Below, piece by piece: positions 4,976 to 7,375 of a DNA stretch of 48,110 nt. The notes under the pieces were generated by a model. It had not been told where the DNA came from, did not search any database, and was given only the letters and a program-made list of their open reading frames with translations. This DNA is from Octopus bimaculoides (Eukaryota), in assembly GCF_001194135.2 (NCBI RefSeq), contig NC_069006.1:15484273-15532382 (forward strand), written 5' to 3'. How positions within the stretch are numbered: position 1 is the stretch's first letter; the number at the start of each line of letters is the position of its first letter. The translations under genes were made by a program, and so were the position numbers.

Positions 4976-5330
4976 GAAGTGGGTGTAAAAGCCTCGAAAA
5001 CCTACTCTGGACTCTCCAGCTTTCTGACTGGTTTTCGTTGATGTGCCACTGTAGGCATGGAGCAATCACAATGGATCATCCATATTGTATTTAGATGGAA
5101 TATTTGTTAGGTCAGAGGATAGGGATACCATAGGTTGTCCACATTTTAAATTGGTGGCTACACAGATCACAAATTTGTGATATGCATAGTCGATTTAAAT
5201 AGGATCCGTAGTAGGGACCCGTTAATTGAAAGCTGAATACGTTCTTACCGGCTCACAAAGACTACCGGGACCGGATAAGCGAACTAGTTAAGAGGCAGTT
5301 GAAGAGAGCTATTAGAGTAGAATCGATAGC

Positions 5331-5659
5331 ATAGTTCTATATTTAAGAGATCAGGAATTATGTACATTATTTGCATTTGACGGATGTTTGTCCTCATCTT
5401 TTTGTTGTTAACACAACATTTCGGCTGATATACCCTCTAACCGTCATCAGGTGTCTTGGGGAAATTTCGAACCTGACTTCTCATTCGTAAGGTAGTTTTC
5501 GATGTTATTATTATTATTCAGGTCACTGCTTGGAATCAAACTCGGAATCTTGGCGTTAGTAGCCCCGTGCTCTTAACCACTACGTCATATGCCCGTGGGC
5601 AATTATGGAGTGAATTTTAGGGCTTTTTAGGAATGTGTTATCCGTCAAATGTAAATAAT
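5331..5659 (-). mobile_element. tRNA-headed, hammerhead-bearing SINE (family H) with 14-bp TSD
   Basis: Minus strand: tRNA-like head 5594-5521 (A-box-like at 5577-5587, B-box-like at 5532-5543), an (AAT)n spacer, a hammerhead motif at 5455-5410, and a 3' tail to ~5331. The direct repeat GTAGAATCGATAGC lies at 5317-5330 and 5660-5673. Confidence 0.85.
5410..5455 (-). ncRNA. Minimal type-I hammerhead ribozyme motif (copy 1)
   Basis: RNA: GACAC CUGAUGA CGGUUAGAGGGUAUAUCAGCC GAAA UG UU GUGUU. Stem I is GACAC/GUGUU, stem II is GGUU/AGCC, the CUGAUGA and GAAA core is intact, and stem III is rudimentary. Confidence 0.7.
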
Positions 5660-7375
5660 GTAGAATCGATAGCGTTTAGCAAAGATTTAGCAATAGAAAG
5701 AAATAGATTAGAGGGAGAACTTGTTAGCAAACTAGAAGAGGGCATTAGTAAAGGTATCGCAACTGCCGCGTTAGAAGCGAGAATGGCCCCGTTGACCATT
5801 TCTTTGAGACGAAATATGAAGGGTGTGTTGTCAGAGCTAAGCCCCACACGCTAAAGCGTGAAGAGACTTAGGCAGTCCGATGGGCCCGAACGCTAGAGAC
5901 GCAACGTTGAAACAAAACCGGGATTAAGTCTTTGACGGATCAGGACGGGCGTGCGCTACTTGGTTCTTAGCAGTTGTGTACGGCTTGCCAGCAGCACTTT
6001 ACGTCGCTGTTTGGGGAGGGTGATAGGTCGGTGACGGTAGCAGACGGACAGATGGATGGCTATTATTAGTTGTTCATATAAAGAAGCACACTCTAAAACA
6101 TTAGAGCAGTAATATACATCAGCATACTGTATTGTCTTTAAAATATTCTATTCTGAATTCGTCTATTTTTTGAATCGTCTCATTAATTGCTATATTATGT
6201 TAACCCACTCTTTCTCTACAACTTTTACTATCCAAAATGTTTATCAACCCAATATTTACAGGCTATTGTTTTTAGCCTTATGTGTGAGTTTCGAGATATA
6301 ATATTCCAAAAATGGATTAATTCAAGTTCTCTTGAACGTTTATAAAATTTTCATGATTTAGATCGTGAAACTGTTTGTCGGAGTAGGTCTTTATGTGATT
6401 TTACATGTATATTTATATCGACGAGTGTATCGATCTGTGCATGTGTATGTAGGTGGTAGGGCAAATCCGATTATACATTAAATATTGGGATGAGTGTTCA
6501 TATATACTGTTGATACACGGATATGCTAAAGAAACTGACACGGAATAATCAAATCCAATCTATTAGAGGCACAGGGAAACTCGGGTGTATGCATCGACAG
6601 TTCAATCAACACACTAACTCAACCACATATTTACATACACCGGGAAATCTCTCAACTCAAAAAGTTTTGTCGCTTCCTTATCGACCAACTTGGACATTAT
6701 ATATATTTTTTTTCTTTTTCTTAATTGTAGTTCAGCAGTTTTGGGTCTAGTCTGGTTGTCATTCACTGCTGCATCAAACATCACTTCCGTTACGTAGTTG
6801 GTATGGACTTCCGCCAATTGACAAGTCACAGTCATTCCTTTTTAGTTTTTGGCAGTGATGAGTTCGGACGTAGGTATGTATGGCTTTCGTTAATTTCTTT
6901 GCAACACATGGCGTTTAATTATCTTATACGTAGAATAATTTTGTTACGACCTATTTGTTTTTAACAATATCAAATGTTTATAATTCCAGGAGTATATGTT
7001 AGTTTAAATTCCATATATATGTGTTTATTCTATAAATTTAATTGCAGCTTGAATTGTTCACAAGTAATAAGTACGTTGTACCATTTCATTAATAAGAGAT
7101 ATTTCAGTTTCATTGTAGTTAGGGCGTTTTAATTATGTTGAAATTTGTTTGAGTTAGTTTTTCCCATGTTTCTATTTTATATGGGGTGGAGGTGCACAAT
7201 GATGGGTTTTTAAGTACATTTTTGAATTTGAGAAAATATATTTTACGTTTATTACCTTACAAAACCTATATCAGGTAAGTAAATTACTTTCTCTAATTAC
7301 ATTAAAAACATTATACCATAATCTGAACACCATGTATCACCGTTCCCTTTGAGCATATAATAAAGTCATTTATAT

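What the first reader, a model, noticed from the sequence alone, without database searches (positions are those of the whole stretch)
5317..5673. tRNA-headed SINE carrying a Penelope-type hammerhead ribozyme, mobilised as a unit with a 14-bp TSD
Seen: on the minus strand, a pol III tRNA-like head (A/B boxes) is joined through an (AAT)n spacer to a 3' module containing GACAC-CUGAUGA-stem II-GAAA-UG-UU-GUGUU. A second copy of that module is at 19845-19984. The cassette is flanked by GTAGAATCGATAGC repeats, and removing it restores the reading frame of the host Tx1-like LINE, so it is a true insertion. Established: minimal type-I hammerheads with a vestigial stem III are hallmarks of Penelope-like element (PLE) pseudo-LTRs and are thought to cleave as dimers; the schistosome SM-alpha repeat is a precedent for a tRNA-related SINE with a hammerhead. 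Inference: this is a SINE parasitising PLE rather than LINE machinery, with ribozyme cleavage defining RNA ends. I do not know of this being described for an octopus SINE. Caveat: both copies read GAAAUGUU where the canonical palindrome would be GAAACGUU, which may be CpG decay.
Basis: partly seen in the sequence, partly recalled or inferred. Interest (0 to 1): 0.9.

Follow-up and report, generated by a model that had tools for sequence, protein, structure and literature searches.

The report
Short retroelement with Penelope-type hammerhead motif
A 329-base mobile-element insertion carries a minimal hammerhead-ribozyme motif of the kind found in Penelope-like retrotransposons and has insertion scars typical of that machinery, but its "tRNA head", its status as a SINE family and any role for ribozyme cleavage remain unproven.

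Summary
The sequence features are real. An exact 14-bp direct repeat (5317-5330 and 5660-5673) brackets a 329-bp insertion on the minus strand. It contains a minimal type-I hammerhead motif. A second copy of the 113-115 nt 3' module lies at 19869-19983 on the plus strand, 91% identical. A hammerhead descriptor hits only these two sites and none in 200 shuffles.

A 24-nt inverted copy of the module's 3' terminus sits at the 5' junction. A 32-nt "tail" lies between the module's end and the 3' repeat. Together with a variable-length target duplication, these are published hallmarks of integration by Penelope-like elements (PLEs).

Other claims are weak or unsupported:
- ARAGORN and Rfam call no tRNA and no hammerhead family.
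- The A/B-box pattern occurs about once per window by chance, and it lies 61 nt inside the insertion.
- No homology supports a "Tx1-like LINE" host.
- The predicted cleavage site is internal, so it does not define the integrated ends.

No cephalopod DNA could be retrieved, so the family-level tests were not done.

Verdict: probably a non-autonomous, PLE-dependent element, a new member of a known kind.

The parts
5660..5673 (-). 5' target-site duplication (minus-strand reading GCTATCGATTCTAC)
   Evidence: Exact 14/14 repeat of 5317-5330
5639..5662 (-). 24-nt inverted copy of the module's 3' terminus (TACATTATTTACATTTGACGGAT). It overlaps the duplication by 3 nt (TAC).
   Evidence: Reverse complement of 5363-5386 with 1 mismatch; blastn E=9e-5 and nhmmer E=0.015 within the window. 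At the mismatch it agrees with copy 2.
5599..5638 (-). 40-nt leader of unknown origin, between the inverted piece and the tRNA-like region
   Evidence: No match elsewhere in the window. It lies upstream of any pol III start predicted from box A.
5522..5598 (-). tRNA-like region with A-box-like TGACGTAGTGG (5587-5577) and B-box-like AGTTTGATTCC (5542-5532)
   Evidence: Pattern scan (3 sites in the window against 1.0 expected). No tRNA by ARAGORN or Rfam. Marginal similarity to another SINE head at 1391-1347 (p about 0.04).
5505..5518 (-). (AAT)4 internal microsatellite spacer
5476..5504 (-). Linker between the spacer and the shared 3' module
   Evidence: Not shared with copy 2
5363..5475 (-). 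3' module shared with copy 2. It begins with the B-box-like GGTTCGAAATT and ends at ...AATAATGTA.
   Evidence: 91% identical to 19869-19983; nhmmer E=1.9e-37
5410..5455 (-). Minimal type-I hammerhead motif. Helix I is GACAC (5455-5451) with GUGUU (5414-5410). CUGAUGA is at 5450-5444 and the bulge C at 5443. Helix II is GGUU(A) with (C)AGCC. GAAA is at 5422-5419, followed by UG, then U16.1 and U17. Predicted cleavage is at 5415|5414.
   Evidence: Descriptor hit. The minimum-free-energy fold of the 46-nt RNA forms helices I and II. No Rfam hammerhead hit.
5331..5362 (-). 32-nt 'tail' (CATAATTCCTGATCTCTTAAATATAGAACTAT) between the module terminus and the 3' duplication
   Evidence: Similarity to copy 2 stops exactly before it. 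No match elsewhere in the window. Its length matches the 30-40 bp PLE tail (PMC8557442) and the 31-bp tail in Adineta vaga (PMC3846280).
5317..5330 (-). 3' target-site duplication
19869..19983 (+). Second copy of the 3' module only. It has no head, no inverted partner and no clear duplication. Its hammerhead motif is at 19889-19935, with predicted cleavage at 19930|19931.

Best explanation
The 329-bp insert is a short non-autonomous retroelement. I infer that it was integrated by the reverse transcriptase and GIY-YIG endonuclease of a Penelope-like element (PLE), not by a LINE.

Its 113-nt 3' module carries a PLE-type minimal hammerhead motif and supplies the 3' terminus that the enzyme would recognise.

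Shown: target-primed integration left a 14-bp target duplication, a 24-nt inverted copy of the 3' terminus at the 5' junction, and a 32-nt tail at the 3' junction.

Inferred: the tRNA-like segment and the (AAT)n spacer are cargo carried between these termini. Whether that segment works as a pol III promoter is open.

The hammerhead is internal to the integrated copy. If active, most likely only as a dimer or with cofactors as proposed for PLE hammerheads, it would process longer or multimeric transcripts. It does not set the ends of the integrated DNA.
For: - Exact 14-bp duplication at the stated coordinates, and no nested duplication inside the insert.
- Hammerhead descriptor: only two hits in the window (5450 minus, 19894 plus), 0 in 200 shuffles. 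The relaxed descriptor gives the same two hits against 0.27 expected.
- Both copies show traits that the descriptor did not require and that PMC4209133 lists for PLE hammerheads: one nucleotide between A9 and 10.1, a short (5-bp) helix I, and no real helix III.
- The 46-47 nt RNAs fold into helices I and II as the minimum-free-energy structure.
- All helix II differences between the copies are transitions around a perfect GGCUG/CAGCC. The core and helix I are invariant.
- The inverted 24-nt 3'-end copy lies directly at the 5' junction and the tail is 32 nt. [quoted passage not shown] PMC3846280 describes a 31-bp tail, duplications of 8-10 bp, and unrelated sequences captured between pLTRs and mobilised in trans.
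- There is no poly(A) or simple-repeat tail next to the 3' duplication.
- Copy 2 is a head-less 3' fragment ending at the same nucleotide, as expected for 5'-truncated reverse transcription.
Against: - Only one full copy and one partial copy were available. No autonomous PLE or PLE coding remnant is in the window (using a probe recalled from memory), so the module could not be compared with a PLE pLTR.
- No Rfam hammerhead family matches, even at E<=10 on 76 nt.
- Helix III reads A-UG-U, not a Watson-Crick palindrome. The dimer duplex is weak (-1.4 against -5.7 kcal/mol for ACGU).
- Helix II of copy 1 has only 4 pairs.
- There is no partial direct tandem (pLTR) in this copy.
- The tail differs from the sequence after copy 2. 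In PLEs the tail is element-derived.
- A 14-bp duplication also fits L1-type integration.
Confidence: 0.55

Rival explanations
1. This is a dedicated tRNA-derived pol III SINE family, with head, (AAT)n and hammerhead tail always together. It retrotransposes with PLE enzymes, and hammerhead cleavage defines its RNA ends.
For: - A- and B-box-like motifs at tRNA-like spacing, on the same strand as the hammerhead.
- The chance of such a pair falling in this 160-nt segment is about 0.002, scaled from the shuffle rate.
- No TTTT run on the sense strand of the whole insert.
- Head and tail lie inside one 14-bp duplication with no nested duplication.
- Precedent: the Sm-alpha tRNA-derived SINE with a hammerhead (PMC2770079, PMC6765202).
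Against: - No tRNA detected by ARAGORN or Rfam.
- The A/B pattern occurs about once per window by chance.
- The absence of TTTT is unremarkable (P=0.36 in shuffles).
- The head starts 61 nt inside the insertion, upstream of which lies a 40-nt leader that a box-A-driven transcript would not contain.
- The only other module copy lacks the head.
- The cleavage site is internal, and both copies retain 52 nt beyond it.
Confidence: 0.25
2. A one-off chimera. The 5'-truncated 3' end of a PLE or of a non-autonomous PLE derivative picked up a fragment of a resident tRNA-type SINE with its (AAT)n tail. This would have happened by read-through or template switching during one integration event. The head is then a passenger and there is no composite family.
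For: - PLEs capture and mobilise unrelated sequences between pLTRs (PMC3846280).
- tRNA-type SINEs fill this window, with at least 15 copies of one family, so a captured fragment is likely to contain one.
- 'tRNA-like region + (AAT)n' looks like a complete short SINE with its own 3' microsatellite tail.
- The head is weakly similar to another SINE head in the window.
- Copy 2 has the module without the head.
Against: - No other copy of this particular head exists in the window to serve as a donor family.
- There is no internal junction signature.
Confidence: 0.2
3. An ordinary LINE-dependent SINE, or other non-LTR retroposon. On this view its 3' domain contains a hammerhead-like string that is a relic or irrelevant, and the inverted piece and tail are accidents of 5' and 3' junction repair.
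For: - A 14-bp duplication is typical of L1-type target-primed reverse transcription.
- 5' inversions occur in L1 integration by twin priming (established knowledge).
- No Rfam hammerhead hit.
Against: - There is no A-rich or microsatellite 3' tail at the junction.
- The hammerhead motif is far beyond chance and carries PLE-specific traits.
- A 32-nt non-templated-looking tail is not a LINE feature (PMC8557442).
Confidence: 0.12
4. A miniature DNA transposon (MITE). It would have 20-nt terminal inverted repeats (CATTATTTACATTTGACGGA) flanked by TA on both sides, as in the Tc1/mariner group, with the 14-bp repeat unrelated to it.
For: The inverted repeats are each directly flanked by TA...TTC-TA-[CATTATTT... 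and ...AAATAATG]-TA-CATAA.
Against: - It leaves the exact 14-bp repeat, 32 nt further out, unexplained. Chance is of order 1e-6 for two 40-nt zones.
- Copy 2 has only one 'repeat arm' and no partner nearby.
- It does not explain the hammerhead motif.
Confidence: 0.06

Closest known systems
Minimal hammerhead ribozymes in the pseudo-LTRs of Penelope-like elements (Cervera & de la Pena 2014, PMC4209133)
   Same: - Type-I topology with a CUGAUGA...GAAA...UH core.
- One extra nucleotide between A9 and G10.1, and a G10.1-C11.1 pair.
- A short helix I (5 bp) and essentially no helix III.
- Located near the 3' end of the repeat unit.
- Mostly found as single dispersed motifs.
   Different: - Positions 15.2/16.2 read U/G rather than a Watson-Crick palindrome.
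- Helix II is 4-6 bp rather than 7-8 bp.
- No linkage to a PLE coding sequence could be shown here.
- Cleavage was not tested.
PLE insertion architecture and trans-mobilised cargo (Arkhipova et al. 2013, PMC3846280; Craig et al. 2021, PMC8557442)
   Same: - A variable-length target duplication.
- An inverted 5'-truncated copy abutting the 5' end.
- A tail of about 31-40 bp at one end.
- Unrelated sequence carried between PLE termini.
- 5'-truncated solo copies.
   Different: - The inverted piece is only 24 nt.
- No direct partial tandem (pLTR) is present.
- The origin of the tail is unknown.
- The element is 329 bp with no ORF.
Sm-alpha / Sj-alpha SINE-like retroposons of schistosomes (PMC2770079; review PMC6765202)
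   Same: A short non-coding retroposon that combines a pol III-type tRNA-related promoter region with a type-I hammerhead.
   Different: - Sm-alpha is recognised as tRNA-Gln-derived by tRNA finders, and its hammerhead is canonical and matches the Rfam motif. Here neither detector fires.
- Sm-alpha is often tandem and its ribozyme excises unit-length RNAs. Here the copies are dispersed and the site is internal.
Metazoan non-LTR retrozymes (Cervera & de la Pena 2020, PMC7229834; Li et al. 2026 preprint, doi 10.64898/2026.07.22.740005)
   Same: Non-autonomous, hammerhead-bearing, low-GC elements of about 170-400 nt, proposed to depend on PLE enzymes. Duplications are longer than 4 bp when present.
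   Different: - Retrozymes are defined by tandem repeats, each with a canonical type-I hammerhead, and by circular RNA intermediates.
- Here there is no tandem array, the motif is the minimal variant, and there is an added tRNA-like segment.

Membership tests
Hammerhead ribozyme, PLE-type minimal type I | Conserved core C3-U-G-A-N-G-A9 ... G12-A-A-A15.1 ... U16.1-H17 | tested here: met
   Both copies have CUGAUGA, GAAA and U-U
Hammerhead ribozyme, PLE-type minimal type I | Helix I and helix II pairing, with a G10.1-C11.1 closing pair | tested here: met
   Helix I is 5 bp in both copies. Helix II is 4 bp in copy 1 and 6 bp in copy 2. Both have G10.1-C11.1.
Hammerhead ribozyme, PLE-type minimal type I | Unpaired nucleotide between A9 and 10.1 | tested here: met
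   C in copy 1 and A in copy 2
Hammerhead ribozyme, PLE-type minimal type I | Palindromic 15.2-16.2 / loop 3, allowing a dimeric helix III | tested here: not met
   Both copies read A-UG-U. The self-duplex forms only through two G.U pairs, at -1.4 kcal/mol against -5.7 for ACGU.
Hammerhead ribozyme, PLE-type minimal type I | Compensatory covariation across a family | tested here: inconclusive
   Only two sequences. Helix II differences are single-sided transitions (G-C to G.U, or a mismatch).
Hammerhead ribozyme, PLE-type minimal type I | Self-cleavage, as a monomer or a dimer | not testable with these tools
   Needs an in vitro transcription and cleavage assay
Rfam hammerhead families (Hammerhead_1, _3, _II, HH9, HH10) | Covariance-model score at or near the gathering threshold | tested here: not met
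   No hit at the gathering threshold, nor at E<=10 on 601 nt or 76 nt
tRNA-derived SINE (SINE2) | Recognisable tRNA-related sequence or cloverleaf | tested here: not met
   ARAGORN finds nothing, including at -ps70 and -ps80. No Rfam tRNA hit at E<=10 on 96 nt.
tRNA-derived SINE (SINE2) | Internal pol III A and B boxes at about 30-50 nt spacing | tested here: inconclusive
   The A box matches 10/11 and the B box 9/11 at 34-nt spacing. The pattern occurs 3 times in the window against 1.0 expected.
tRNA-derived SINE (SINE2) | Head at the 5' end of the insertion, abutting the target duplication | tested here: not met
   61 nt (a 24-nt inverted piece plus a 40-nt leader, overlapping the duplication by 3 nt) precede the tRNA-like region
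tRNA-derived SINE (SINE2) | A-rich or simple-repeat 3' tail at the 3' junction | tested here: not met
   (AAT)4 is internal. The 3' junction reads ...ATAGAACTAT|GCTATCG.
tRNA-derived SINE (SINE2) | Multicopy family with a constant head + body + tail | tested here: inconclusive
   One full copy. The second copy has the tail only. No cephalopod DNA was retrievable.
PLE-mediated insertion | Target-site duplication of variable, short length | tested here: met
   14 bp, exact
PLE-mediated insertion | Inverted 5'-truncated copy adjacent to the 5' end | tested here: met
   24 nt with 1 mismatch, at the junction
PLE-mediated insertion | 30-40 bp tail at one end | tested here: met
   32 nt between the shared terminus and the duplication. 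Whether it is element-derived could not be tested.
PLE-mediated insertion | Partial direct tandem forming a pseudo-LTR | tested here: not met
   No direct repeat of 8 nt or more inside the element other than the duplication and (AAT)n
PLE-mediated insertion | 3' sequence shared with an autonomous PLE of the same genome | not testable with these tools
   No PLE in the window. No eukaryotic genome collection was available.
Non-LTR retrozyme | Tandem repeats of about 150-450 bp, each with a type-I hammerhead | tested here: not met
   The two copies are 14 kb apart on opposite strands. There is no tandem array at either site.

The most novel reading that the evidence does not exclude
This may be a bona fide SINE family whose tRNA-derived pol III head is fused to a PLE 3' module with a minimal hammerhead. 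Its partner would then be a Penelope-like element rather than a LINE. That would extend the SINE-LINE partnership rule to a third retrotransposon class. It would also suggest that Sm-alpha-type elements belong to a wider, PLE-dependent group of SINEs.
Probability: 0.25. Interest if true: 0.6.

Novelty: new member of a known kind. Interest (0 to 1): 0.4.

Why it matters
Hammerhead motifs in Penelope-like elements and the non-autonomous elements that ride on them (retrozymes, solo pLTRs with cargo) are established, but their mechanism is poorly understood. SINEs are conventionally paired only with LINEs.

A cephalopod element that joins a pol III-type head to a PLE-type tail, with clean PLE-style junctions, would be a tractable case for two questions. 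The first is whether PLE enzymes recognise a short 3' module in trans. The second is whether the minimal hammerhead is needed.

SINEs and PLEs both expanded strongly in octopus genomes (PMC13282606), so a link between them would bear on how those genomes were shaped.

As it stands the evidence is one and a half copies, so the value is that of a well-defined lead.

Tried and rejected
ATTEMPTS TO RETRIEVE MORE COPIES (all empty)
- Protein search with a chimera of eight reading-frame fragments of the element: 215 word candidates, none at E<=1e-3.
- Protein search with the restored host ORF: none.
- Protein search with two LINE-like ORFs of the window: none.
- DNA pattern scans of the metagenome collection for the hammerhead module and for the window's abundant SINE: 0 hits each, so that collection appears to hold no DNA of this organism.
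- Viral contigs: 0 hits.
- Exact-protein look-ups of three window ORFs: not on record.
- Representative-library search with an abundant-SINE ORF found only a few ORFs on 1-2 kb Logan contigs. That is too little DNA to mine.
- Full-text search for five sequence strings of the element: 0 papers.

DETECTORS AND HOST IDENTITY
- Rfam at the gathering threshold and at E<=10 on three sub-windows: only chance sR35 matches.
- Pfam on the host ORF and on three + strand frames of the restored region: nothing.
- tblastn of a PLE protein recalled from memory against the window: nothing. This was a lead only, not a test.

CHECKS INSIDE THE WINDOW
- Duplication or inverted partner for copy 2: only a 7-mer at chance level.
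- Nested duplication around the head: none.
- Tail compared with the leader, as a test for a circular or tandem template: no convincing match.

REJECTED
- CpG decay as the cause of AUGU.
- The CTGATGAG at 20015 and the 31-nt repeat at 31061 as hammerheads: neither has a GAAA partner.
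Full report
OBSERVATION

On the minus strand, window 5673-5317 reads as follows:
- GCTATCGATTCTAC, at 5673-5660.
- A 329-nt insert, at 5659-5331.
- GCTATCGATTCTAC again, at 5330-5317.

The 14-mer is exact. 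It is the only direct repeat of 8 nt or more in the stretch apart from (AAT)n. For two 40-nt zones flanking an element, the chance of sharing an exact 14-mer is of order 1e-6. This figure is my own calculation.

A 115-nt stretch at 19869-19983 on the PLUS strand is 91% identical to 5475-5363 (nhmmer E=9e-39 and 2e-37). The second copy is therefore real. It is in the opposite orientation and is slightly shorter than the coordinates given.

IS THE HAMMERHEAD MORE THAN CHANCE?

I wrote a descriptor after the published minimal hammerhead (PMC4209133). It requires:
- CUGANGA, with an optional one-nucleotide bulge.
- Helix II of at least 4 bp, closed by G-C.
- GAAA, then 0-6 nt, then U-H.
- Helix I of at least 4 bp.

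It hits exactly two places in the 48 kb on both strands, namely the two copies. It gave no hit in 200 first-order Markov shuffles. A much looser descriptor still finds only these two, against 0.27 expected per shuffle.

Both copies also carry traits that the descriptor did not demand and that Cervera & de la Pena list as typical of PLE hammerheads:
- One nucleotide between A9 and 10.1 (C in one copy, A in the other).
- A short 5-bp helix I.
- Practically no helix III.

The isolated 46-47 nt RNAs fold with helices I and II as the minimum-free-energy structure. In longer context a competing GUUGUG/CAAC hairpin appears.

The ten differences between the copies spare the core and helix I. The helix II differences are all transitions around a perfect GGCUG/CAGCC. 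With two sequences this is not covariation evidence.

Against membership:
- No Rfam hammerhead family scores, even at E<=10 on a 76-nt slice.
- Positions 15.2/16.2 are U and G in both copies, so a dimeric helix III could form only through two G.U pairs (-1.4 against -5.7 kcal/mol for ACGU).
- CpG observed/expected in the window is 0.90. Two independent CpG decays are therefore an unlikely explanation, and the source element probably already had UG.

NEW ANATOMY

Three points were not in the finding.

First, positions 5662-5639 (TACATTATTTACATTTGACGGAT) are the reverse complement of the module's last 24 nt (5386-5363), with one mismatch. They sit directly at the 5' junction and overlap the duplication by TAC. 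At the mismatch the inverted piece agrees with copy 2. It therefore looks like a copy of the terminus rather than a conserved terminal repeat.

Second, similarity between the two module copies stops at exactly the same nucleotide (...AATAATGTA, window 5363 and 19983). In copy 1 another 32 nt (5362-5331) follow before the 3' duplication. This tail matches nothing else in the window.

Third, the tRNA-like region does not abut the duplication. The inverted piece and a 40-nt leader (5638-5599) precede it.

COMPARISON WITH PLE INTEGRATION

Craig et al. (PMC8557442) describe PLE insertions as follows:
- They are frequently 5'-truncated.
- 'A 30- to 40-bp extension (tail)' occurs at one end.
- The target duplications are of variable length.

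Arkhipova et al. (PMC3846280) report for Adineta vaga:
- A 31-bp tail.
- Duplications of 8-10 bp.
- Unrelated sequences, including a host gene, captured between pLTRs and mobilised in trans.

The present insert shows the duplication, the inverted 5' piece and a tail of the right length. Copy 2 looks like a 5'-truncated solo 3' end with no inverted partner. There is no poly(A) or microsatellite at the 3' junction, which a LINE-dependent SINE would normally have.

Together with the PLE-type hammerhead, this is why I rank PLE-dependent integration first.

Three things are missing:
- A direct partial tandem (pLTR).
- Any PLE coding remnant in the window. A tblastn with a PLE protein recalled from memory found nothing. 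That probe is a lead only.
- Any comparison with a real octopus PLE.

THE 'tRNA HEAD'

TGACGTAGTGG (5587-5577) and AGTTTGATTCC (5542-5532) resemble A and B boxes, matching 10/11 and 9/11 at 34-nt spacing.

The evidence against a confident tRNA call is this:
- ARAGORN finds no tRNA even at 70% thresholds.
- Rfam gives no tRNA match at E<=10 on the 96-nt head alone.
- The same A/B pattern occurs three times in the window against 1.0 expected from shuffles.

One of the other two sites (1391-1347) is the head of a different SINE. It is only marginally similar to this head (p about 0.04).

The lack of a TTTT run on the sense strand is compatible with a pol III unit but is unremarkable (P=0.36).

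The chance that such a pair falls in this particular 160-nt segment on the hammerhead strand is small, about 0.002. The region is therefore probably derived from a tRNA-type SINE. That does not show it drives this element. The 40-nt leader upstream of any box-A-directed start argues that the RNA that was copied was not a simple pol III transcript from these boxes.

'tRNA-like region + (AAT)4' also looks like a complete short SINE with its own tail. It could be cargo. There is no nested duplication around it, so head and module did move together in this event.

THE HOST

Removing 5331-5673 leaves a 93-codon open frame on the + strand (...KRAIRVESIAFSKDLAIERNRLEGE...). It is coiled-coil-like. 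Only 31 codons lie to the left of the junction, and the opposite strand is open too.

Three searches found no homology:
- Pfam on the ORF.
- Pfam on the three + strand frames of the restored region.
- A search of 5.8 billion proteins.

'Tx1-like LINE' is therefore unverified. The case for a true insertion rests on the duplication, not on the frame.

RIBOZYME AND RNA ENDS

The predicted cleavage site (after GUU, window 5415|5414 and 19930|19931) is internal. Both copies retain the same 52 nt 3' of it. The 5' ends are unrelated to it. The integrated ends were therefore not set by hammerhead cleavage.

This matches PLEs, where the motif lies inside the pLTR near the 3' end and its role is still unclear (PMC8557442, PMC6765202).

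RIVALS

- The full first-reader model, a dedicated pol III SINE on PLE machinery with ribozyme-defined ends: 0.25.
- A one-off PLE-mediated capture of a resident SINE fragment: 0.2.
- A LINE-dependent SINE with an irrelevant motif: 0.12.
- A TA-flanked MITE: 0.06. Each arm of the inverted repeat is indeed flanked by TA. This model leaves the 14-bp repeat, the one-armed copy 2 and the hammerhead unexplained.

WHAT COULD NOT BE DONE

No tool gave access to cephalopod genomes.
- Three protein searches were empty.
- Two metagenome scans and one viral scan were empty.
- Three exact look-ups were empty.
- ORFs derived from the window's abundant SINE exist only on 1-2 kb Logan contigs.
- No paper in the library prints any of five diagnostic strings of the element.
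- I found none describing a hammerhead-bearing SINE in cephalopods. The giant-squid genome paper merely counts 235 Rfam hammerhead-1 hits (PMC6962438).

That the window is from an octopus was not established by any tool. It rests on my recollection of the abundant SINE's sequence.

COMPARISON AND VERDICT

The element works most like a small non-autonomous rider on PLE machinery. The closest comparisons are solo pLTRs with cargo and the 'short nonautonomous Penelope elements' noted in butterflies (PMC6685494).

It is not a retrozyme in the defined sense, because it has no tandem array and no canonical hammerhead. It is not a member of the Sm-alpha family, whose tRNA and hammerhead parts are recognised by standard detectors (PMC2770079).

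I file it as a new member of a known kind, of moderate interest. There is about a one-in-four chance that it represents a true pol III SINE family partnered with a PLE, which would be a more notable variant.

Noticed in passing
window 2124-2549, 8563-9285, 14516-15383, 21916-21984, 29430-29570, 32979-33116, 35362-35842: At least 15 copies of an abundant tRNA-type SINE (...GTTCTGAGTTCAAATTCCGCCGAGGTCGACTTTGCCTTTCATCC...). Several form short head-to-tail arrays with a period of 217-256 nt and are often preceded by (ATT)n. 8688-8933 and 8944-9189 are 100% identical, which is either a very recent duplication or an assembly artefact.
   Followed up: partly
window 37052-48109: More than 10 kb of degenerate (CGTT/CGTA)n array, interrupted by N gaps. 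It produces long spurious ORFs of the 'TYVRSFVR' type.
   Followed up: no
window 31061-31363: A tandem repeat with a 31-nt unit (91-nt higher order). The unit contains CCTGATGATGAGC. No GAAA partner is present, so it is not a hammerhead by my descriptors.
   Followed up: partly
window 1347-1391 (minus): A second A/B-box site, the head of another SINE family (CAGTGGTTAGGGCAGCGGACTCACGGTCGGAGGATTGCGTTTTCGATTCCCAG). It is only marginally similar to the head at 5587.
   Followed up: partly
window 29962-30216 (minus) and 26378-26845 (minus): Two ORFs that look like the C-termini of LINE proteins. One has 'RRKLRCFGHVIR' and the other a CxxC...HxxxxH finger. Neither has a Pfam hit or a homologue in the protein collection.
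   Followed up: partly
window 20015-20022: A CTGATGAG 32 nt downstream of module copy 2, followed by a small hairpin (CGTAACATATTACG). There is no GAAA within 45 nt, so it is probably chance.
   Followed up: partly
window 5472-5462 (minus); copy 2 at 19872-19882: The shared 3' module itself starts with a B-box-like GGTTCGAAATT (9/11 to GGTTCGANNCC). The module may therefore also descend from a tRNA-related sequence.
   Followed up: no
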